DNA of 43,812 nucleotides from Hyphochytrium catenoides (GCA_900088475.1 FLMG01003186.1:1-43812); one strand, 5' to 3'; counted from the first letter of the stretch, positions 1 to 17,300 are shown. Numbers and translations are program-made. The notes: generated by a model from the letters alone, not told the origin.

Positions 1-1186
1 CTCTCTCTCTCTCTCTCCCTTCCTCTCTTCTCTGCTGTCGTCCCCTCTCCAGTTACATCTCTCTCTCTTTCGCTTCGATCCTGCTCAATATTTCCCTCTA
101 GTTCTACCTCTCTCTCTCTTCCTCACATCCTAGAAGACCACTGGTCCAAGATATTCATTCTTCTCGTTGATCGTCGCTCTATCTCCCTCTAACTTTCCTT
201 TTGTCTACCCCTCACTCTCCCTCCTCAAAACCGTGTCATCTTCTTCCTCTCTCTCTCTCTCTCCTTGCCTTCAGGTCCCTCCTCCCTCCATGTTGCCAAC
301 CATGGCAGGTGCTGTCCTCCTTGTATCTGGCTCTTGGAAGCTGCTCTTGATGAAGCTTCTCTTCCCCACATCATCGGCTGTCGCCTTGCTGCTGCCGCTG
401 TGTTGTTATTAGCAAGAAGGTCGCTTCTTTTCTTTCTTCTTCTGTCGAGGCTGCCGGCGTCATCATCAACCTGAGCTTGTGATATAAGATCATGGCCATT
501 GAGAGCGGAGGGAAGGTGGGACACCACTGCCGATCAACTCTTCGCTTGTCCTTTCCTATCGTTTCCTACCTCAGCACTCAATGATCAGCGCATGCTTTCT
601 AATAATAACACCCTGCTGCGACTCTATCTGGAGCTTTGACCACTGACCAGCAAACGGGTGATGATGATGCCCTGATGCCACTCGGCAGAACCTTAGATTT
701 GGGCATAACCCGCCCAGCGTCAACTGAAGATTTTGAAGCTCATTGTTCTTTTGTCACCACACTTCTGCTCTTCTTCGCAGTCCACAAAGTTCCACTTCTC
801 TTCCTCTCCTAGCGGCAGTGGAAAGAGACCCATTCTCTCGCACTGTTAGATAGTAAAAAGCTAGTGGCCGAGCAGGAAGATAAGGCAGTATTGAGTCTCG
901 ACTTGACGGTTGACTGGGGTTGAGGTGAGCATCGAGCGAAGACACGGAGAGTAGTTCTGAGGGAAACAGGACTGACGGTGGAGCATTACACGGACCGAGC
1001 AGCGCATAGGTCGTTTGTCTGTGGCTGGCGACCTTCAGTCTTTACTCACTTCTTCTTCTCGAGCTAGCATTTCTCACGCACTTCTCCCGGAAGTACTTCA
1101 AAGATTCAGAAGAACACTCTCCCGGTTGTCCTAGGAAGTGAGAGGTGGACGTGATGAAGAACTAGATATCATCCTGCCTTTCATCA

Positions 1187-5358: not shown

Positions 5359-8300
5359 CTATTTATCTTCCTGAAGTTTAAAGGGTGCAGTGAAGCCTGA
5401 TGACAGTCGAGCTTGGAGGCCCAGATGACGTAGGTATGAAGAGGAAGTAAGGCGCGAGAGATCCAGAAGAAACTGCTCGTTCTCTCGCATCAGTTGTCGT
5501 TCTTCTCTCTCATCCCGCTTTCCGAAGTGGAAGTGAGCTGCCGCCGGTGCCACGTCCTGCTTTGATGAACCGGCAGAGGAAGGAGGAGCATCGACGTTGG
5601 GCTCCACATCGCTCATTGACAGTGCCATAGCCTAGAAAAGGCAATAAGTTCAGTATGATTAGGGATAAGATTCTTTACGGAGAACTAGGGAGGGAAGTAG
5701 GACTAAACGAGATGACAGAAGCTCTTTCCAGCTGTTCGCCCTCACCTTCGCCAGGGACATTTCTTCATCGACATCGCTTTCCACCTCATGTCCTTCTGGT
5801 GCAGGGCCTGTCAAAGAGTGGGAAGCAGTAGTTAGATGGCTGGAGAGGTATGCCTATCCCTTGTCAGTAGCTATTTACCACCGTCTCTTCTTGGCGACTG
5901 CATCTCAGTCTTAGCTTGTACCAACTTTCCTACCACTTATTCTTCTCAGTCTCTACTTGTGAGCCCTTACCAACTTGCAGTTCTTCTCCACTGAGTCTCT
6001 TATAGAAGAGGATGTATGCCGAGTCCGATATAGAGGTTCGCATCGTGGTTTGAATATCTTCCCAGCTTGTTACCGTGATCTTCAGGAGATAGCACCCGAA
6101 GGATTGCCGGAAGTTAGCACAGTGAAGGTTAAGACAGTGCTGCATAGAAAGAATAGTAATAAAACAAAGGAGACCAGCCGAGAGAATGGGCGACTACCAA
6201 TACGCAGACACAATGGAATACCTGGGTTGGAGGCTAAGATACGTTAGACGATGGACAAACTCACCATTGCATCGTTGAACTTTAACCAAGGAGCGTCACC
6301 AGCCTCCTCCTTATGCAACCCTAAACTATTACTGTGCCGGGCGTAGGCGTAGTAGTGCCCGGAATTGGCCGAAGCTCCATTATGCACAACAATAGCGTAT
6401 AAACCATATGTCCGACTATATCCAGCCGCCGCTCCAGCCTCAGTTAGATGAGGACTCAGCGCCTTGGGAACCTTGTAAAGGCATTTAGTACGACTGTGAT
6501 GGCTAAGGAATCCTAGTTCGTTTTATCCATCATAACTGTCACAGAATCCTCCTTTCTTCAGGGTCAAGCCCACTTGGAGGTTCTCCTGATAGTCTCTCCT
6601 TCTCGCGTCTGATAACGGCACCCTACACATGTCTTACCTCTGGTAGCGTTAATCGGGGGTCAAACTTGACGTGGTGCAAAATCTTCATCGCTCTATTCTG
6701 CTTCCAATCGTACCACATCCGCTTGATAGTCATGATTAGGTGTAGTGGAGGTTCAGTAAGGATGGTGCGGGTCTCGAAGGCTGAGAGTTGGGAACATGAT
6801 GAGCACTGCAGTTTGTTCTCTCCTCCTAGCACTCTTGGCGATACGAGACGGGCCAGTAAGGAATCCACCGTATGACAGGAGACCTAGAAGAAGCGCAGTC
6901 GCTTGGGTAAGCAGTCCTAATCACCTCCGTTTGTTTTTCCATTTTGCTGGTGACTCCCGTACGGCCCTATTGTCTAACTTCTTTCATGAAAACTGACTAC
7001 TCCTATTAGCTGCCTCTATACTATCCTTAGCAAGAGTTAGGGGCATGACTACAGTGTCTCTGCTCCATCCCTCAGCCTACGTACCCTCTCTGAGAAGAGT
7101 TCCTTTCCGTCTTGCCATTCGGTGCCAAAGTCCCTCTTAAAAGCTATCTGAACATAGTTGTCCTTCACAATATTCCATTCACCCTGCTCATGACCCTGGC
7201 TCCACCAGCCTACATAGTCCATTAGCATAGATGGCCACATAGGAGGTTGTAGATCAAAGACAATCTATAAGGGATAGAGATTGAACCAGTACATCAAGTG
7301 GATTGTCCAGAGGACTCAACGCTTACTACAGGATGGCAGTGTTTTCGAATGTAAGATGATGTCGTGAGAGTAGTAAATGAGCAAGAATGATCTCCATTAC
7401 TTCCTACCTTTTGCCATTGAAAAGCCAGAGTCAAAGGCAAACTCACATGGGAATCGCACCTCGGTCCGGTTTTGTTCTCCTGCTACTCAATTTTAGCAGT
7501 GAGAGACATGCTCAGAAAAGTAGAACTCGAGGAAACCCTCTCTCAACGCTAACGAAACTTAAAGCGTAACAAAAGACGACCTCTGAGAACAAATGTCTTA
7601 CCCCATAATCCTGTAAAGGTAGATCCTTCGCCGCCAGCACCGTCCTGTCCTGCCAGGGGCGTCAATACGCCAATTATCTTTCCTGGCATATAACCTTGGG
7701 CGACAGAGTCATATGTGCCCTCCAAGATTCTGCCCTCCGCTCTCTCTACGGCATACAATTGAAGGATGCCGACGCTGCTTGGGTATTGTCCGTTCAGCGG
7801 ATGAGGCATAGGAGGTCTCTCAAGTGGGGCTCGCCTAGAGACGCAAAGTACAGGTCGTTCGAGACACCCAGGGGAGGGTTAGTGACGATATAGAAAGAAT
7901 CGAAGAGGCTAAGAGCGGCATAGATGGATCAGAGATAAGAGAGGCCCTCACCTATAGCAGAGATACAACCCTTTTCCTCCAGCCCCCGAGTTCAAGTTCG
8001 CATCCATCCCTAGTGGAGTCTGAGAAAGTTTCGTGAAGCCGGGTGGCAGAGTCTAAAGGAGCATGAAATGAAGGTTAGCAACCTGCAAGACTTAGAAATG
8101 AGGGTACGTCAATTTTCACTCCCAGGACAGAGTGCCAAAATAAGTTCATTTTGACGAAGGGTAAGGAAATTCTCCTCCCACAGACGCTCATCAACATACT
8201 GTGTGGCTTTTGGTAGACTATCCAGTTCCATACCTCCTTCTCAGGCCAAATGATAGAGATGTCCATAATGTATTCGGATTGCTTCTTAGAAGCAGAATTT

Positions 8301-11300
8301 AACGACGACTTCCCTTCCACCCCTCCGTGTTGTTGCTCTGCCCTCCGATAACAAATAAAGATGGGTATGCCTGAAGTGCCTGCATTAAGATTAGCGCTCT
8401 CTCCTCGAGGCGTCTCGTAGACAGGGATAAACCCTTCCGGCGGTGTATCTATTTCTCCAAAAAAGATCTATTCATATGAGAGCCGACGCATTAAAGGCCG
8501 ATAGCGACGAACCCAGAGAAAAAGTATGGAAGAGCACAAGATACAGTGAAGAAGTGACAAAATGCTATTTCTAAAATGCTGGTAAGCGAGGAGTAGACAG
8601 GGTCGTTGTTGCTAGTTCATTGAGGCCCAGAACTAGTATGACTGGGACCAGATCGTGGCTAAGGCACTGTTCAATTTAGAAGCGCTGAGGACAGGAGTTC
8701 GGGTTACTGACCCCTAGATCCTGGATAGGAACTCCATCTGCGCTCCTCTGGACACACACGTATAGCGATTCGCCCCCTGAGTACAAGGAAAAGAGTGTTA
8801 CTTATTTAGTAAGACTGAGAGGAAGAAGGGCACCCAGACAATGGGGAGAATAAAGCTACGAAGCAAAAGGGTGCAGCTTTGGATAAGTTGGTCTCAAAGA
8901 ACAGAGCCATACCCTCATTGACATCTCCCGAGGCACCGCCCACAGTTGTCTTAATGACTTCGAAACCCTTCGGCACAGGGTCTGCTCCCTTGATGACGGA
9001 AACTGCAGTGACAGGAGGCTTAAGAGACACTTCCTGTAGGTAGGAAGAACGGGGGGAACGCAGCTGTCAGTAAGAGAGAATCTGACAGCGAGAATAGAAT
9101 GACAAGCCAAGAGCCCACCAAGATAGCTATAACAACTAATAGGGATAAGTATGCTTGAGTTGAGAAGCTGTCTTTGATTAGCAAACCTTGGTACTTTGTT
9201 GGGCGGCTATAACCGCACTCTGCTGCGTCGCCACGTCATAATATCTTCCTTCCAGCAGTACCAAGTTATCTTGCAGCCGCATGCGGAAGCGAAGGCCCTG
9301 TGCCACATGCGTCAAGGGGGAGAAGTCAGAAGGCATAAGGAAGGACTGACAATGAAGACAGTTGATCCGATACTTAGAGTCTACTCAGACAGTGATGTTA
9401 GAAGTGATGATGGTAGGCGATTCAGGAAAGAAGGGTTTGCTCGATAGCATAAAAAGAAACAACACTTACTTGTGGCCTTTTGGACTTGTCGTCAGTCCAT
9501 GTTCCAATCATCTCCCACTCCCGTGGCTGGATGGACATTGCCACTCCCCTGATCTTTGCATTTGTTCTTCCAGCCAGGGAGCCTACACCATACCCCTCAA
9601 GAGTGAACCCTAATTCCAAGCTAATGAAGGTGGAAGAATATAGTGGAACAATCGAAGCGAACACGGATAACAAATCGAAAAAAGATCAGGCGAATAGAAC
9701 ACAGATGTTACCTTGGAAGTGAATGGCCACTCCTTTGCTAATCTCATTAGTAAACTTAACCACTCTTCGATTTCGCTCGGCCTTTTCGTCACCTGGACAA
9801 ATGAAGAATAAGAATCAAAGCAAAGATGGGCAAAGTCTTTGCACAGTAACGCCGGCCCCGTAATAAAGAAGGCCATGTCGGCGAAAGGTCCAAAAAGGGA
9901 AGTAAAGCAGGTGATCTACTGCTTTTCCGGAAGGTGGTTTGATGACCTACTTCTCCAATTTCCAAGAACATCTGCCGGCCCAGCAGGCTGCACAACGTCA
10001 ATCCACTCGTACTCTTGATACTTTGGGATCTTGCGTGGTGCCCTGAAGACGTCGATTACGTAGAGGGGGCAGCCACTCCCTGTCATGGTAAAGAGGAGAT
10101 AAGACGGCCTAGATTGAGTCCTTCTGTACGAAAAGAACCCGTACGCGGAAGGATCAAGATACTGATGGAGATTTGTAAGACAAAATGCGCCTTTGGCCCA
10201 GCGAAAGCGGGAGGAAAAATGGGCACCAACCTCTTCTGACAGCCAGAAGTTTTCCCTCCTGAGTCTTTGGACCGATGACCTCAAAGCCATCCTGCCTTGC
10301 CTTTGGTACCTCCTCAGATGCGAGCAACCGAATATCAGTGATTGGGGCCTCTTGGCCTCCGTCAGAGTAGGAGAGGTATAGCTGATCGCCTGTTTTGGCA
10401 GCGTTAGGGAGCTGGCAGTGAAAAATCTATCGCTGAACGGCGTTAAGCCCCACTTATCGATCCCCAAAAGGTACTTAGCAAATTATGGGCGCAATCGCTA
10501 CAGAGAAAGTGCAAGAGGGGTTGACTGCTACCCAGGAGGTGCCAATGCCGGGCTTGGACAGAAAGAAAAATCCCTGTGCTTGAAGTGTTACTTTACCAGG
10601 GTGAAGATTAACATTGTCGTGCACTATCTTGTAGCCTGGCAATCCCTCCCGAACCGCCTTGAGGTCACGAATGGGTAGATCTGAGCGGTAACAAAGGAAG
10701 ACTTTGGTGCCTAGCCCGAGAAAGAGAGCACAAGCGGTAGAGGTGGCAGTTAGTAAGTCAAGCATCTCATAACGACGACGGAGGAAGTGAGTGCCTATAC
10801 TAGGGATAAGCCCTAAGACAACCTAACAGTCTTCATTTTTAGCCTCTTATCTACCTCAGCCTCTACAAGAAGGGGTTCGCATACCTTGACCTTGGTTGAG
10901 GTCGACTCGAACTTGTCTGAACCCATCTGGCACTTGCTGGTCCCCAAAGATGACCTGCAGGTATGGATGTTAATGTGTGAGGCCCTAAGTCTATAAGCGA
11001 GGCTACACGGGTGGTGATGGATAGAATAGGCTTACAATCTAGCGACACTACCTGAATGTCCGTGATCGGGGACTCCCTATTACTCCGTCTAAAGAAGAGG
11101 TAAACCTGATCTGCAATGCTACAGTGAATAAGGACAAGGGTGACGTTGATTAGAAATTGGAAGGTGCAAAGAGACCTAGTCGTAAGCCCTGAGATTGGGC
11201 CGATTACCGTCCTCCTTGGTTTATATTAGTCCGGATACATTCATAACCTGAGAGCAATGGGACCGGATCCCCGGATTTGGCTGTTTTGATGGCTATCTCT

Positions 11301-14300
11301 GTTATTGGTTCCTTGCCCTCAGTCCGTGATACACAGAGGAAGACGTAGGGAGCACCATCTCTGTCCTTGTTCAGGTTATAGTTCAATCTGGTATGAGAGC
11401 AACAGCGCGATAAGGGAAGCGCCACTTCCTCTAACTCAATTTTTGGAAAAAGGTAACAACAGGAAGGATTTCACAGAGACAGACAACTAGTTCCAAAGCA
11501 AAGAGCCAATGAGCTTAGGTGGGGCAAAGCCACTAAAAGAGGTTCGTGAAAAAACAGCGCCGTTGGTCTATGATTACCGCTCATAGTCAGGCGGCGTCTG
11601 GATGTCCTCCAACTTAGAACCACTAACAACAACCAGGTCGGTTATCGCCGTGTAACGCAGGTCCAGCATGTTCAACATGAGTTCCCAGAAGTACTCCGTC
11701 TAGAAAAGATGGGAGAATGTAGAGCGAGGGGAAGCGACGCTCAGGAACTACAAGCTAATAAGACGACAGAACAGGTAGATGGGCTCCAAGGACGGTAAAT
11801 AGTGGGGGAACGCGGCAAAGATCTTTAGTGTTAGAGAAGCATTGACGTGAATCAGACGAGGACGCTTGAGACATGACATAGAAGAAAGAAGCCTATGCGA
11901 AGGAAACTCAAACAGGAAGATGGAGGCCGCAGCTCCATGTCTGCCATTTCATCTTATAAACAAAGAGCAATACAGAGCCTTCCTGCTACCTTCACTGAGA
12001 CATGATCACAACTCTTGCACCGTAGTGCAGTGGCTTGATTTCCTCCGAAGATAGAGCGGAAGGCGTCTGGTAGGTTCGATGCCCTGAACCCGAGCTCGAG
12101 TTGGTCCACCAAAAAGTTTGCAAAGTCTGAAACGTCCTGTTGACAGATAGTGTGAGTAAGAGTCGAGGACGGTACTCAGAGGGGAGACCGGATGAGAGCC
12201 TCGGTTACGTAGAGGCCAAGAGATTAGAGTGGGCAGCAAGGTTGAAGGGATAGACGATGTAACCGGCAAACCCTCTAGACTCAGGGTATACTTTGGAGAT
12301 GGAATCCGGGGCGCTACAGGACTAGAGATGAACAAGAACCTGTTGTCTCCCCTTGGGGAACTGATCCGGAAGAATGAGCTGAATTTCGTGCGATGGCGTC
12401 GCCTTTCTCTGGCTAAATAACAAGCGAAGGAATAGCCGGCGGATAGCGACGAAGAACTGCAACTTCCCCTCCAGATCGTCTAAAGCTTCTGCATGCTGGA
12501 TGGCTTTCAATAAACACCTGGTGAGGGAGACATTGCGGGTACAAATGCGTGGCCTAGCACACGAGAGCATGGACTCCAAAAAATTTGGGAAGGGAAGGTA
12601 TAGGTAGACATCTGACTGCGAAACCGAAGGGATGATTGCTATTCTACTCACCGTCTCGAAAATCGTCTGTCATAAAGAGCGCCTGGAAGAGGGAGTTCTG
12701 ATAGCAAATATTGGTCAGGTCTTCCTTCATATTGATGAGACCCGTCAGTGAAGCAGACGAGGCGGAAGAGCCGCGGAAGTGTTCGCTATCTCGAACGAGA
12801 AGGGACGACCATCTGCCAGAAGTTTCTCCTACAAAAAGTGGAAGTGAAAGAGTCAGAGGGATTAGGAGAGAGCTTATCGAATAACGCCATTGACTTTGTC
12901 TCAGCAGGATTCGGTCTAGGGGACACGGGGTTACCTTTGAACCATTTCCCGTCAAACTTAGAGCAATCTTCTGCGAACGCCAGCAGAACGGCGCTCCTAG
13001 CTCCTCGAGTCATCTACAGGACAAACAGATCAGCTCTGAGGCAGACGACCTTTTAAGGGAATAAGGGAGAAAGCGGCTACTCGGGCTGTTACAAATAATC
13101 AAACGATCAAATTAGCCTTAGAATCGAGGTGGAGAAACAAGAGAGAAGGAAGCTTGACACGGGTCAAAGCATAACAAAAGGTAGTACCTTCGTCCATGCA
13201 CCGCCTCTTTCTCCTGCCTACCTGTTGAAAACTGCCAAGCAGTACCCATCGTCCATCCTGTAGCCGGGCAACCCCTCGGAGTAAAGCACTAAGGTTCATG
13301 ACGTTCCGACCTTCCATTATCTGAGGATGTAGAGTTAGGGTCGGTCGGCTCTCTCAAGTATGCCCTTTTGTGCGTAGAACATTATATCCTTGATTCCTTA
13401 ACTGGCTTGTGCATTACCTCGCCGAAGGATGCTGCCCCAACGTCTAGCTGCATGTTCCCCGCGGTTGCTTCCCATCGACCTTTAAAAGGTGGGCAAGGGC
13501 CTCCTTCTTCGTCCTCAGTCATCATCCTCTCGTCTGAGAAGAGTCGCAACTTCATGGCCTCCAACTCTTGCCACATACCATTTCCAGAAGCTTCTTTTTG
13601 CGCTCCTCCACGGTCAGAAGAAGTGGTGATGGGATGGGCGTCCTGGACGACCTCATGCTTGTCTTCTTTCCTGGTAAAGTTCACAACAATCTTAGGATCG
13701 CCGCTAATCTTGGACGTCCCGAAGGACACGTAGGCGAAACGGTTAGAGCTTAGGGTGGAAATAGACTGACATGCTGTCTTGGTCCGTCGCTGTGGGCGTT
13801 GCAGGAGGCGCGGAAGAGACGTGAACGGCCCTTTCAGAGTCGCAGACAGCACATCGGGAAAGACTGCCACTATTGATAACAGTGCAAGTACTGCAAGCCC
13901 ACTCTGTGAGAAAGGGCGAAGAATAAGATATTCGCAATAGACTTCCTACTCTTCTGATGATAGTAGCTCTCACTTACCGACTTGGGCGGCTGGGATATCG
14001 GTTTGAGCGGCTGGGATAGCTGTCTCTTGACCGGGAGCTTTAGCTATAGACTATCGGTCCCGAGAAATGAGGAACATTAGATCTGATAATATCCCATATG
14101 GTCTGAGCTAACGCAGAATAGGGTTGCCAAGAAAGAAAGAACTGCAACATGAACAGCTCCATTCACTCAGGCCCGAAATACACTCTGACAATGTTTGCTA
14201 CCCAGAGCTTTAATAATTGTTGAAAATAGTACGGAGTAGTAGTTTAGAGAGAACTCTCACCGCCGGCCTTGGGCTACCGCATACAGAGCACGTGGAAACT

Positions 14301-17300
14301 TCCATAGGGTTCCGCAAAGTGCAGGCCTCACAAGACCATTCTCTGAACGTTTTCCAGTGCAGGCCGCAGGGACGGAAAAGCATTAATTCATCTACCCTGT
14401 GAGGCTTCTGGGCGAGGATGTTTGCTTACCTTGCTATTTCCGGGACTGGGACCAAAGCAGACGCTAAATCTACCGTCTGATCTGATGATAAAGGTGAACC
14501 TTGACCACAAACAGAGCAGAACGAAGCGGTCCGATTGTTTACCACGGTGCAGCTTTTACACCGCCATGCTTGAACGGCAGAGGAGAGGGAGGAGAGTGGA
14601 GGTTCAAACGAAGAGACCGTAGAATGAGGAACCCCTGCAATCGCCTTGCACACGCTGAGGGCAGTTCCACACAAGCATGACCCTTCGGGGTCTCCAATGT
14701 AGATGAGGTCGTGTCCATCGTGGCAATAACGAGCACAAAGCTGGCAGAGCCCTGGGCCCTGGCACATATGGGAGAACATAGAGAGGGGGCGAGACAGTAA
14801 CGAAGAGCGATCAATAAAGGAAGAGACGTCAAGCGGTTTATATTGCTGGCTGAGTGGTGTTTTTACCTGAATAATGTTGCAAGTCCTACAGCCGTAATGC
14901 TCAACCTTTCCTTGAACTCTCTCTGGGTCTTTCTTCGAACAATATACTAACTCCTGGCGGTCATGAACGGATGAAACGGCCTGTTCCTGTCCCTTCACCG
15001 CCCCTGTCCCAATATCCCGTCAAGCGATCAGAATAAGAACCAAGCTTTCAATCCAAGTGGTGGAACCATTTAAGAACCTTCAAGCTCGCTTACCATAAAG
15101 CTCCAGCAGAGGAAAGCCTTCTGTAGCTGTGTCCGCAGCCCCACTTCTGCAAGGTTCATGAAGAGATAGTGAAAAGGGTTAACCAGCTATAACAGAATAC
15201 TGGCATGCCTATAGAGCTACATCTATGCCAGAGCCAACTTCACCACCTCTAGCGTGTCGTCACCCTTAGCTCGAACTCGCTGTCTATCAACCTGTCTTCT
15301 TACCTGCCGCGGAAGGACCAAGATGTAAGTGCGAGCGAGGGCATCGTCGAGGCCAATGGACCTATGGTGCTCTCGTTCTTGAGGAAACCATGACCTGGCG
15401 CAAGACAAGCGATGCCTAGACGAATACTATCCATCCCCTCCTTCAGGCGGAGTAGGGAGAAAAGATCAAGAGGGATATCCCAATGCAGATTCTCTCCCAC
15501 GGAAATGAGTGATAAATATTGGCGGCGATCGTATGCCCATCTGACCTGTTAACGGCAGGCGGATGAGCAAGCTAATACTATTTGATTTGTGATTCTACTT
15601 ACCTTCATCTCCCCAGGAGAGGGTGGTAGGAGAACCGAGGAGAGTCTTCCTAGAGAGTAGAAGCGGCCGGATTCCTTCGGACTCGATATTCGCAGAGAAA
15701 TGGTCAAGACACCACTGCGTTCCAAAGATAGCAGCAGAAGGAGTACTGGATCCTCAAGACATGTGCTTGATGAAGAATAATCCAGAGGGAATCCAAACTT
15801 TTGGCTAGAGGTGAGAGGGACGGAGAGAGGTCGAAGGCCCCAGCAGGAGGTGTTGGCAAGAAGAATGCCGACGCAGAAAGGAGAGATTGGGGAGCATGGA
15901 TATTGAAGGCTCAAGGATGTATCGAACCCTTCCGCCATTCTTAATCTCCTTTTATGCCAGATAGCAGATCCCAAGTGGATGAAAGGACTCTGGCTTTCCT
16001 CCCCAGATAGGCTCATTACACATCTTCCGGTACCGTCCTCAATCCTTACCCCAGAGGTGCACAGGAAGTCTTCATTGTGCTTTTGAAAATGCCCAGTCAC
16101 TGGGAGTGAGCGAAAGTGACCAAGAGGAGGTTCATCACTAGGGTTTATCCTGTACAATCCAAGTTATTACATTTGACGCAGATGAAGCGGAAACAAGAGT
16201 AAGTCGATAGGGTAGCAGTAGGATCCATGGCAATAAGCGGCCCCCTTACTCAAAGCTGATGAACAGAGGCAATAAGGTTAATCTCAAAGCAAGAAATGCT
16301 GCATAGTCAAGCAGAGCCCATACGTTGATCACACATGGCAGTCTTTAAGAACCAGGTCACCTCCTCAAAGACATTACCTATATGCGAGATGGTGGAAGAG
16401 CACTCCGTGATTGCCAAAGGGTGTAAAATCAGCTAAGAAGCAGCTCGAATCTAATAATGGCCAATATCCCAGGAGGCCTGGCATTATTCGGGTAAGTCGG
16501 TACGATCGTATGGCAGAGCAGACCCTGCATGTCCCGGATGCTCCACCAAGAGGCATTGTGCAGGGAGAGAATGAGAAGCGTTCGGTTGGAGTTTACCTGG
16601 TTCGTCACCCCGTTTAGCTCTCCTATTATCTGTACCAATCTCTTCAGCAGTCCTGCCTCCTTTCCAGACCGTAAGCTCGCACAGAGAACCCGTAAAGCAC
16701 CTTTCAGGCACCCAACCAATCTCGGTTTCCTGCTCTTTCAGGCTAGGAAGGCCCCCTAGAACAAGGGGAAATGAGGACATGTTCTGTCGTCTTGCTACGG
16801 GTATGTTCCCTTGAACTTTTCCATCCACGTAGAGCATGAAGCTACTGTCATTGCTTTGGAATGAGAACGCGACATGCGAGAAAGCTCCCCGGGAAAGCGA
16901 CACGCTGGAAGTCATAGAGGTTGATTGCTCTTTTCCCCCTACGTGAGCAAGTACTGGAGGGTTTGCGAGCATTGTCAAGGTAATTACAAGCAGAAATAGG
17001 AGGAGGAGCAGTCTTGACAAACCTCGAAGGTCGCCATCGAGTTCTATCCGCCACTCTTCGGTGCTGATAATAACTGATCCTCCTAAGGTTTCTTGTGGTG
17101 CAACACGGATTGTTCATATCGTAAGACAGATATAAAGAAGAGTGTGCGCAATTGTGGCGCAGTGCAGAAATGCGTCAGTGAAGGGGAAACATGTCAAGGT
17201 GGTACTGGACGGTGGTGGTGACTGGTATACGGAGTCAGTAAGTTGTATGTACCAAGTGAGGTAGATGAGGTTTAGCAAGGTACTTGTAGTAGAGTAAGAG

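What the first reader, a model, noticed from the sequence alone, without database searches (positions are those of the whole stretch)
6637..12136. USP catalytic domain split in frame by a ~700-aa insert carrying three MABP beta-prisms
Seen in sequence: after RCKSC...TEYFWELMLNMLD (the E.F..L.L box), about 17 phase-consistent GT-AG exons encode nine MABP-type blades plus other modules. The catalytic domain then resumes at VDSLLARLVSPRVLGGENKLQCSSC, so the two CxxC halves of the USP fingers zinc site are separated. Established: this junction is a known USP insertion point (USP4/11/15 carry a UBL insert there), and MABP domains of MVB12A/B and DENND4 bind acidic phospholipids. Inference: a deubiquitinase whose catalytic core is directly tethered to, or switched by, endosomal or other acidic membranes. 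I do not know this architecture from any characterised protein.
Basis: partly seen in the sequence, partly recalled or inferred. Interest (0 to 1): 0.85.

Follow-up and report, generated by a model that had tools for sequence, protein, structure and literature searches.

The report
USP deubiquitinase with inserted MABP prisms
This is a real, intact gene for a ubiquitin-removing enzyme whose catalytic domain is interrupted by three probable membrane-binding beta-prism domains, but the design was described in Phytophthora in 2010 and is found throughout oomycetes, so this is a new member of a known, still untested family.

Summary
On the minus strand, 19 GT-AG exons between 12136 and 6638 join in frame. 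Seventeen of them carry a 695-aa insert between the two CxxC pairs of the USP fingers zinc site.

My spliced model (1,228 aa) aligns in one colinear BLASTP segment (E = 0, 33-39% identity, about 1,120 aa) with proteins of Saprolegnia, Aphanomyces, Phytophthora, Lagenidium and others. In Saprolegnia, most of the insert and the C-terminal USP half lie in one uninterrupted ORF.

The insert is MABP prism, MABP prism, beta-barrel, MABP prism, beta-barrel.
- Prisms 1 and 3 match solved MABP domains by sequence profile (E 2.5e-15 and 2e-5).
- The divergent middle prism matches only by structure. The three solved MABP structures named here are the only chains of 48,161 with Z >= 8.
- In an AlphaFold model of the closest orthologue, the two USP halves reassemble (USP35, Z 34.6, 303 of 317 residues).

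The architecture is not new. De Souza and Aravind (2010) reported two MABP domains inserted in the DUB domain of P. infestans PITG_02561. One public record is already named "RanBP2-type, UBR-type, ubiquitin specific protease, MABP".

Membrane tethering is a reasonable inference and is untested. No RNA evidence was available. Verdict: new member of a known kind, with a third MABP prism that sequence searches miss.

The parts
11661..12757 (-). N-terminal half of the USP catalytic domain. It holds the Cys box (catalytic Cys codon at 12706-12704, in a family-specific GLINM-KEDLT-NICYQNS box), the QQD box, the first zinc CxxC (12019-12008) and the ExFxxLxL strand. Exons: 12828-12652, 12503-12340, 12136-11990 and the first part of 11699-11578.
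   Evidence: Pfam UCH on exons (below cut-off for these exons), profile positions 5-27 and 90-140. Conserved in the orthologue alignment. Coordinates. The acceptor at 12503 is the least certain junction.
10658..11660 (-). MABP beta-prism 1 (blades 1-3, model residues 236-386). Cys is present in the last strand of blades 1 and 3, as described for eukaryotic MABP domains.
   Evidence: An orthologue-only HMM hits the window protein at 198 bits. The profile of this region hits the beta-prism of Mpf2Ba1 (8b6v) at E 2.5e-15 in three stretches. hhalign against prism 3 gives probability 98.7%. The model shows 3 x 3 strands.
9785..10657 (-). Divergent MABP beta-prism 2 (blades 4-6, model residues 387-505).
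   Evidence: An orthologue-only HMM scores 97 bits on the window protein. The profile gives no significant PDB hit, and hhalign to prism 1 reaches only 24% probability. By structure, 8b6v (Z 10.9), 3tow MVB12B MABP (Z 9.8) and 2qp2 (Z 9.7) are the only chains of 48,161 with Z >= 8. These three also fill ranks 1, 3 and 4 of the Foldseek list.
9025..9784 (-). Beta-barrel module 1 (Gly/Trp-rich, basic, pI 10.1; model residues 506-616).
   Evidence: Seven to eight strands in both models. It gives only weak matches (Z 6-7) to small up-and-down barrels such as avidins, lipocalins and OMP-like or designed barrels. Charge.
7825..9024 (-). MABP beta-prism 3 (blades 7-9, model residues 617-790).
   Evidence: An orthologue-only HMM scores 160 bits on the window protein. 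The profile hits Mpf2Ba1 (E 1e-5) and the human MVB12B MABP domain 3tow (E 2e-5). Pfam PF10240 (MVB12) hits in orthologues map to model residues 620-765.
7085..7824 (-). Beta-barrel module 2 (Gly/Trp-rich, acidic; model residues 791-930). It leads straight back into the USP domain.
   Evidence: All-beta in the model, with pLDDT mostly above 85 outside loops. Conserved blocks such as GWW and W..(V/I)KDxY(V/L)xI(A/G)(F/Y)K are seen.
5987..6883 (-). C-terminal half of the USP domain. It holds the second zinc CxxC (6805-6794), the His box (His codon 6357-6355), the Asn-Asp of KFND (Asp codon 6273-6271) and AYILFYKR. Exons: 6883-6638, 6471-6265 and 6079-5971.
   Evidence: Pfam UCH at 38 bits on the His-box exon, above the cut-off of 23.9. 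USP35 is the best PDB sequence match for the orthologue's C-half, E 5e-18. Alignment.
5608..5775 (-). UIM-like motif (acidic run, then L-x-x-A-x-x-x-S) spanning the junction of exons 5807-5746 and 5631-5359. The C-terminal tail runs to the stop at about 5359.
   Evidence: The motif (D/E)EE(A)M(L/S)LAKAM(A/S)LSMS is conserved in all aligned orthologues. It fits the UIM consensus by eye only: Pfam gave no UIM hit.
13746..16999 (-). Upstream part of the same gene (context, outside the finding): a LamG-like domain, a UBR-like Cys/His box and three RanBP2/NZF-type zinc fingers.
   Evidence: On window ORFs, Pfam gives Laminin_G_3 at 40.7 bits and Zn_ribbon_RanBP at 34.5, 29.0 and 16.8 bits. Orthologues show the same domain order. 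tblastn colinearity is. I did not resolve the exon structure here.

Best explanation
Shown: window 5359-13320 and upstream, on the minus strand, is one intact multi-exon gene. It is the counterpart, in an intron-rich genome, of the oomycete LamG / UBR-box / RanBP2-zinc-finger / USP protein whose catalytic domain carries MABP domains.

The USP domain has all its catalytic and zinc-binding residues. It is split at the fingers (box 3/box 4) insertion point by a 695-aa block: MABP prism, divergent MABP prism, beta-barrel, MABP prism, beta-barrel. In the predicted structure of the closest orthologue, the block is an excursion from the fingers and the two halves close into a normal USP fold.

Inferred: the enzyme is an active deubiquitinase. 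Its three MABP prisms hold it on a membrane surface, most likely endosomal or another acidic membrane. The N-terminal NZF-type fingers and a C-terminal UIM-like motif capture ubiquitin on membrane cargo, which the USP core then removes. I see the prisms as a localisation device rather than a switch.
For: Gene and architecture:
- In-frame GT-AG model.
- Single colinear HSP with E = 0 to orthologues, and an alignment with no breaks at exon junctions.
- tblastn colinearity on the window.
- In Saprolegnia, the N-terminal USP half plus the start of prism 1 lie in one ORF, and prism 2 through the C-terminal USP half lie in another uninterrupted ORF.
- About 20 representative clusters and 56 homologues carry the whole insert.

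Catalytic competence:
- The Cys, His and Asp/Asn boxes and all four zinc cysteines are conserved.
- The model of the orthologue has pLDDT 86 and pTM 0.73.
- It superposes on USP35 at Z 34.6, rmsd 2.2 A, with 303 of 317 residues, across model range 1..1112.

MABP identity.

Membrane role:
- MABP domains of MVB12 and MPEG1 bind negatively charged lipids (PMC6753088).
- De Souza and Aravind inferred a membrane adaptor role for this very architecture (PMC2881412).

Ubiquitin capture: RanBP2-type fingers score above the Pfam cut-off in the window itself.
Against: - No transcript evidence exists for this gene in this organism.
- The Pfam, PDB-profile and structure results come from orthologues that are 33-39% identical. 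The spliced window protein has no reference and could not be submitted. Its single exons give nothing significant.
- Lipid binding is not tested for any member.
- The three prisms of the window protein are neutral to acidic overall (pI 5.2-6.5). Any binding of acidic lipids would therefore need a local basic or hydrophobic loop, which I could not map.
- When folded alone, the third blade of prism 2 was poorly predicted.
- The UIM is assigned by eye only.
Confidence: 0.6

Rival explanations
1. The gene and architecture are the same, but the MABP prisms and barrels are a recognition scaffold for proteins, ubiquitin chains or glycans rather than lipids. On this view they select substrates or partners for the DUB.
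For: - The prisms carry no net positive charge.
- The same protein has LamG-type (lectin-like) and UBR modules upstream.
- In stramenopiles, MABP is also fused to PNGase/PUG proteins of glycoprotein turnover (unchecked notes).
- In MPEG1, the MABP domain also makes protein-protein contacts between subunits.
Against: Every MABP domain tested so far binds acidic lipids. Its other fusion partners (DENN, Sec7, VPS13, ESCRT-I) are membrane-traffic proteins.
Confidence: 0.22
2. The insert is a regulatory switch. Because it sits between the two zinc-binding hairpins of the fingers, membrane or partner binding by the prisms changes the geometry of the fingers, which grip ubiquitin. That would turn the enzyme on or off.
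For: The insert leaves and re-enters at the fingers, which contact the distal ubiquitin (position shown). A pTM of 0.73 for 1,154 residues suggests fixed rather than floppy domain packing.
Against: In the model the USP core superposes on ubiquitin-bound USP35 at 2.2 A without any ligand, so it shows no sign of a distorted or blocked state. I had no access to inter-domain error estimates or coordinates. There are no experimental data.
Confidence: 0.12
3. The insert exons are not part of the USP transcript. They would be a nested gene, or cassette exons that are normally skipped.
For: Only the absence of RNA data for this organism.
Against: - In intron-poor Saprolegnia, both USP halves are in continuous ORFs with insert sequence.
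- The insert is conserved and colinear in more than 50 proteins.
- Skipping exons 11387 to 7209 would join a phase-2 end to a phase-0 start and shift the frame.
- No start or stop signals appear inside the block.
Confidence: 0.02

Closest known systems
Phytophthora infestans PITG_02561 and its oomycete orthologues. Examples: Saprolegnia parasitica SPRG_04680, Aphanomyces invadans H310_11898, the Phytophthora cactorum 'Ubiquitin specific protease domain' protein, and a record named 'Zinc finger RanBP2-type, Zinc finger UBR-type, ubiquitin specific protease, MABP'.
   Same: - Same domain order: LamG, UBR box, RanBP2/NZF fingers, then a USP domain split by MABP-containing sequence, then a UIM-like tail.
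- Colinear over about 1,120 aa at 33-39% identity.
- MABP domains inserted in a DUB domain were described in 2010.
   Different: - The window gene is far more intron-rich, with at least 26 introns against very few in Saprolegnia.
- It is more compact, lacking several low-complexity loops.
- It is only about 35% identical, so it comes from outside the sampled oomycetes.
- The paper counted two MABP domains and six zinc ribbons. Here the insert resolves into three prisms plus two barrels.
- That PITG_02561 itself is the P. infestans member found is inferred from the matching description, not checked by accession.
Human USP35 / USP38 (catalytic domain structure 5TXK)
   Same: USP35 is the best structural match for the reassembled core (Z 34.6, 32% identity). 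It is also the best PDB sequence match of the C-terminal half (E 5e-18). The Cys-box flank (QALFMT..FR) looks similar.
   Different: I know of no MABP, LamG, UBR or NZF modules in USP35/38. The N-terminal half matches USP47 slightly better. No phylogeny was run, so subfamily membership is open.
USP4 / USP11 / USP15 (UBL domain inserted in the catalytic domain)
   Same: A folded module is inserted between the two zinc CxxC pairs of the fingers, one of the common USP insertion points (Ye et al. 2009, cited in PMC12440824). The D1D2 cores of USP4 and USP11 superpose on the model across the insert (Z about 30).
   Different: Their insert is a ubiquitin-like domain plus a disordered linker, which modulates catalysis. 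Here it is about 700 aa made of five beta-rich domains, with a probable localisation role.
MABP domains of ESCRT-I MVB12B (3TOW), Photorhabdus plu1415 (2QP2), Pseudomonas Mpf2Ba1 (8B6V) and MPEG1
   Same: - A beta-prism with three-fold symmetry, built of three-stranded sheets.
- The P-x-G-[YF] signature.
- Cys in the last strand of subdomains 1 and 3.
- Significant profile and structure matches.
   Different: In those proteins the prism is a terminal or stand-alone domain next to UMA or MACPF modules. Here three copies are embedded inside an enzyme domain. Lipid binding is shown for MVB12B and MPEG1 but not for this family.

Membership tests
USP / UCH peptidase (Pfam PF00443, MEROPS C19) | Cys box with the catalytic cysteine, and a QQD box | tested here: met
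   Window exons match UCH profile positions 5-27 and 90-140, though below the cut-off as fragments. N[IV]CYQNS and GRQQD are conserved with orthologues whose whole-protein UCH scores are 101-146 bits.
USP / UCH peptidase (Pfam PF00443, MEROPS C19) | His box (GHY) and the Asp/Asn box | tested here: met
   Window exon 6471-6265 scores 38 bits against a cut-off of 23.9. H, W, N and D are invariant or nearly invariant in the 32-sequence alignment.
USP / UCH peptidase (Pfam PF00443, MEROPS C19) | Complete fingers-palm-thumb fold formed by the two halves | tested here: met
   Tested on the orthologue P0006, not on the window protein itself. USP35 5txk gives Z 34.6, rmsd 2.2 A, 303 of 317 residues, model range 1..1112.
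USP / UCH peptidase (Pfam PF00443, MEROPS C19) | Deubiquitinase activity | not testable with these tools
   Needs a Ub-AMC or di-ubiquitin assay.
MABP domain (de Souza and Aravind 2010) | Type-I-like beta-prism made of three homologous three-stranded subdomains | tested here: met
   The model shows 3 x 3 strands for each of the three prisms, and these map onto the window residues. In the isolated model, the third blade of prism 2 has low confidence.
MABP domain (de Souza and Aravind 2010) | P-x-G-Y signature on the second strand, and conserved Cys in subdomains 1 and 3 | tested here: met
   Six of the nine window blades fit P-x-G-[YF], and another three have relaxed forms: PPDYE, SGYE, PDGF, PGYK, DGFE, PKGFE, PEGF, PPGF. 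Cys is present in the last strand of blades 1 and 3 and of blades 7-9. Prism 2 lacks it.
MABP domain (de Souza and Aravind 2010) | Significant sequence-profile match to known MABP domains | tested here: met
   Prism 1 matches Mpf2Ba1 at E 2.5e-15. Prism 3 matches MVB12B 3tow at E 2e-5 and Mpf2Ba1 at 1e-5. PF10240 scores 27.1 and 23.5 bits (cut-off 22) in two orthologues and 21.0 bits in a third. The link to the window is through orthologue-only HMMs at 198 and 160 bits. For prism 2 this feature is NOT met.
MABP domain (de Souza and Aravind 2010) | Structural match of the divergent middle prism to solved MABP domains | tested here: met
   8b6v Z 10.9, 3tow Z 9.8 and 2qp2 Z 9.7 are the only chains of 48,161 with Z >= 8, all on model residues 1..117. 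Foldseek E-values alone are not significant, at 0.085 or worse.
MABP domain (de Souza and Aravind 2010) | Binding of acidic phospholipids | not testable with these tools
   Known for MVB12B and MPEG1. The net charge of the window prisms is neutral to acidic, which neither supports nor excludes a local binding loop.
Oomycete-type LamG/UBR/NZF/USP[MABP] deubiquitinase (PITG_02561-like) | Colinear full-length similarity, including the insert | tested here: met
   Single HSPs with E = 0 over about 1,120 aa. The insert alone gives E 1e-99 to 1e-146 against nine orthologues.
Oomycete-type LamG/UBR/NZF/USP[MABP] deubiquitinase (PITG_02561-like) | N-terminal LamG domain and RanBP2/NZF zinc fingers in the same gene | tested here: met
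   On upstream window ORFs, Laminin_G_3 scores 40.7 bits and Zn_ribbon_RanBP scores 34.5 and 29.0 bits. That these exons join the USP exons in one transcript is inferred from the orthologues' domain order.
USP35/USP38 subfamily | Groups with USP35/38 to the exclusion of other USPs | tested here: inconclusive
   USP35 is the top structural hit and the top C-half sequence hit. USP47 is slightly better for the N-half, and USP12/46/9X follow closely in Z. No tree was built.

The most novel reading that the evidence does not exclude
The three prisms and two barrels form one rigid platform attached to the tips of the USP fingers. Docking of this platform on an acidic membrane would set the finger geometry and make the enzyme active only on membrane-bound ubiquitinated cargo. 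That would be a lipid-gated USP, a kind of regulation not shown for any deubiquitinase of this class.
Probability: 0.1. Interest if true: 0.7.

Novelty: new member of a known kind. Interest (0 to 1): 0.3.

Why it matters
The gene adds a divergent, intron-rich member to a deubiquitinase family conserved across all the oomycete groups sampled here. That family has been known from sequence since 2010 but never studied at the bench.

Two points go slightly beyond the published description:
- The stretch between the two recognised MABP domains is itself a cryptic third MABP prism. It is visible only by structure.
- The rest of the insert consists of two small beta-barrels with no family.

If the membrane-tethering idea holds, the family would be a natural example of a USP built to work on a membrane surface. 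Oomycetes, where transformation is possible, would be the place to test it. As a discovery about this window, it is modest.

Tried and rejected
- **RNA evidence.** No RNA run was listed for 6400-12399. A second query of any kind gave only DNA contig holders and metagenomes. I did not use read laying, because DNA contigs cannot show splicing.
- **Pfam on single insert exons.** No family matched.
- **Fragment search.** The search for homologous proteins with one insert exon found no candidate. The length window excludes the full-length kin.
- **Single window exons against PDB.** Mpf2Ba1 came top for exon 8467-8234, but at E 0.39. Exon 11387-11208 gave only noise.
- **Prism 2 by sequence.** There was no PDB hit. 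hhalign to prisms 1 and 3 reached only 24% and 1% probability. Its assignment therefore rests on structure.
- **Whole-model Foldseek.** It aligned only one USP half per hit and could not show reassembly. VIA-align was needed.
- **UIM.** Pfam does not detect it in orthologue tails.
- **The spliced window protein.** It has no reference, so Pfam, AlphaFold and database searches could not be run on it directly. I used orthologue P0006 (39% identical) and local HMM/BLAST comparisons instead.
- **Nested or skipped-exon reading.** Rejected on comparative and phase grounds.
- **Organism.** I did not identify the window's organism.

Full report
**What is in the sequence.** The finding lies on the minus strand of an intron-rich eukaryotic window with about 50% G+C. 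Three-frame reading let me chain coding blocks through canonical GT..AG introns. The resulting model has 27 exons from 13320 to 5359 and 26 introns of 89-290 nt. It has no internal stop and encodes 1,228 aa.

The insert is 695 aa (window 11660-7085). It begins after the strand TEYFWELMLNMLD and ends at VSCHTVDSLLARL. The first zinc pair (CKSC) is at 12019-12008 and the second (CSSC) at 6805-6794. Pfam UCH matches four catalytic exons in profile order: 5-27, 90-140, then, after the insert, 129-180 and 193-233. Only the His-box exon is above the curated cut-off.

**Is the gene model real?** No RNA run could be listed, so I used comparative evidence. A HMMER search of 1.84 billion representatives with exon 6883-6638 returned long proteins that carry the match near their C-termini. 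My spliced protein aligns to them in one BLASTP segment with E = 0. The identities are 39% to P0006, 38% to P0012 (Saprolegnia parasitica SPRG_04680), 36% to P0021 (Aphanomyces invadans H310_11898) and 35% to P0003 (Phytophthora cactorum), over about 1,120 residues including the whole insert.

The multiple alignment has no gaps or loss of similarity at exon junctions. tblastn of the orthologues recovers most of these exons (13 to 17 per query), in order, on the window. In the Saprolegnia genome, residues 1-1508 (N-terminus, N-terminal USP half and the start of prism 1) are one open reading frame. An 815-codon frame covers prism 2 through the C-terminal USP half. The insert is therefore physically in frame with both catalytic halves in a relative, which excludes a nested gene. 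In the window, skipping the insert exons would join phase 2 to phase 0 and break the frame. The least certain junctions are the acceptor at 12503 and a NAGNAG choice at 7479. Neither affects the conclusion.

**What the insert is.** Orthologues show Laminin_G_3, zf-UBR, three RanBP2-type zinc ribbons and a UCH domain in two stretches. Inside the gap they show Pfam PF10240 (MVB12, whose N-terminal part is the MABP domain) at 21-27 bits against a cut-off of 22. These hits map to model residues 620-765 of the window protein.

I aligned each third of the repeat region from eight orthologues.
- The prism 1 profile hits the C-terminal beta-prism of the MACPF protein Mpf2Ba1 (8b6v) at E 2.5e-15, in three stretches.
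- The prism 3 profile hits Mpf2Ba1 at 1e-5 and the crystal structure of the human MVB12B MABP domain (3tow) at 2e-5.
- Prisms 1 and 3 are homologous to each other (hhalign probability 98.7%, E 3e-16).
- HMMs built from orthologues only hit the window protein at 198, 97 and 160 bits for the three regions.

The middle region has no significant sequence match to known MABP domains. I folded P0006:866-2019 with a 32-sequence alignment, which gave pLDDT 86.2 and pTM 0.73. Each of the three regions forms three three-stranded sheets, and these map onto nine blades in the window.

I also folded the middle prism plus the next module alone and searched 48,161 PDB representatives without Foldseek. Exactly three chains reached Z >= 8: 8b6v (10.9), 3tow (9.8) and 2qp2 (9.7). 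All three aligned over their MABP domains. Foldseek placed the same three at ranks 1, 3 and 4, though with non-significant E-values.

Most window blades also show the published P-x-G-[YF] signature. Prisms 1 and 3 have the Cys in subdomains 1 and 3. The two remaining modules (window 9784-9025 and 7824-7085) are Gly/Trp-rich beta-barrels. They give only weak matches (Z 6-7) to small up-and-down barrels.

**Do the USP halves reassemble?** VIA-align places USP35 (5txk) on the model at Z 34.6, rmsd 2.2 A. It aligns 303 of 317 residues, spanning model residues 1..1112, which is both halves across the 766-residue insert. USP12, USP46, USP9X, USP1, USP2 and USP7 follow at Z 30-33. The catalytic Cys, His and Asn-Asp and all four zinc cysteines are conserved. 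The protein should be an active USP.

**Comparison with what is known.** The insertion point, between the two CxxC pairs, is one of the common USP insertion points (Ye et al. 2009, as cited). From my own knowledge, it is the point used by the UBL insert of USP4/11/15, whose D1D2 cores superpose across the insert.

The architecture itself is published. De Souza and Aravind (2010, PMC2881412) defined the MABP domain. [quoted passage not shown] They proposed that MABP domains link associated domains to vesicular membranes.

A search with the insert of P0006 found the family in Pythium, Globisporangium, Phytophthora (including P. infestans), Bremia, Peronospora, Hyaloperonospora, Albugo, Saprolegnia, Achlya, Thraustotheca and Aphanomyces. 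One record is named 'putative Zinc finger, RanBP2-type, Zinc finger, UBR-type, ubiquitin specific protease, MABP'. No paper in the library beyond the 2010 note mentions PITG_02561 or studies the family.

Unchecked notes of this scan list PNGase-MABP, Sec7-MABP and EF-hand-MABP genes in the same genome. These are the other stramenopile architectures in the 2010 paper, so the genome fits that lineage.

**How it probably works.** Shown: an intact USP core, three MABP prisms and two barrels inserted at the fingers, RanBP2/NZF fingers and LamG upstream in the window itself, and a conserved UIM-like motif downstream (by eye only).

Inferred: MABP domains of MVB12B and MPEG1 bind negatively charged lipids through a loop. 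The prisms most likely hold the enzyme on an endosomal or other acidic membrane, while the zinc fingers and UIM bind ubiquitin on cargo.

Caveats:
- The window prisms are not basic overall (pI 5.2-6.5).
- No member has been tested.
- A protein- or glycan-recognition role, or an allosteric role at the fingers, cannot be excluded.

**Verdict.** The structural interpretation is right. The functional one is plausible but borrowed and untested. The claim of an unknown architecture does not hold. This is a new, divergent member of a known family, with a modest refinement: a cryptic third MABP prism and two unassigned barrels.

Noticed in passing
window 9025-9784 and 7085-7824 (minus strand): Two Gly/Trp-rich all-beta modules of about 110-140 aa sit between and after the prisms. 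The first is basic (pI 10.1) and the second acidic (pI 4.8). The first is predicted as a small up-and-down barrel. Its PDB matches are weak (Z 6-7: avidins, lipocalins, OMP-like and designed barrels), so no family is assigned.
   Followed up: partly
window 5608-5775 (minus strand), across the exon junction 5746/5631: An acidic run followed by L-A-K-A-M-A-L-S fits the ubiquitin-interacting-motif consensus and is conserved in all aligned orthologues. Pfam did not report a UIM in orthologue tails.
   Followed up: partly
window introns after 11208, 10885, 10597 and 8913 (minus strand): In four of the nine blades, an intron sits at the same place: just after the N-x-G turn and before the last strand (phase 2 in the first, phase 1 in the other three). 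This suggests the blades multiplied by exon duplication, or that an old intron position was kept.
   Followed up: no
window 12757-12700 (minus strand): The Cys box carries a family-specific five-residue insertion: G-L-I-N-M-KEDLT-N-I-C-Y-Q-N-S, against the usual G-L-x-N-x-G-N-T-C-Y. It is conserved in all orthologues as NM(K/Q)xxLTN(V/I)CYQNS. Its effect on the oxyanion or active-site loop is unknown.
   Followed up: no
window about 13700-13980 (minus strand): Between the third RanBP2-finger block (frame 0) and the long open frame that follows (frame 1, 13945-13385), I could not find a convincing intron. The candidates are only 22-55 nt. The upstream exon structure of the gene remains unresolved.
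   Followed up: no
P0001 (3,205 aa, database protein): The top hit of the representative search is a protein with ten tandem copies, about 321 residues apart, of a segment resembling the C-terminal USP half. It is either an odd tandem array or an assembly or prediction artefact.
   Followed up: no
P0195 (Hyaloperonospora arabidopsidis orthologue): UniRef names this 2,712-aa orthologue 'RxLR effector candidate protein'. Its Pfam domains are those of the LamG/NZF/USP/MABP family, so the label looks like an annotation error.
   Followed up: no
same genome, other pieces (notes s1-352534, s1-357005, s1-331103): Unchecked notes report PNGase-MABP-PUB, ARF-GEF(Sec7)-MABP and EF-hand-MABP genes in this genome. 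These are the other MABP fusions that the 2010 paper lists for stramenopiles.
   Followed up: no
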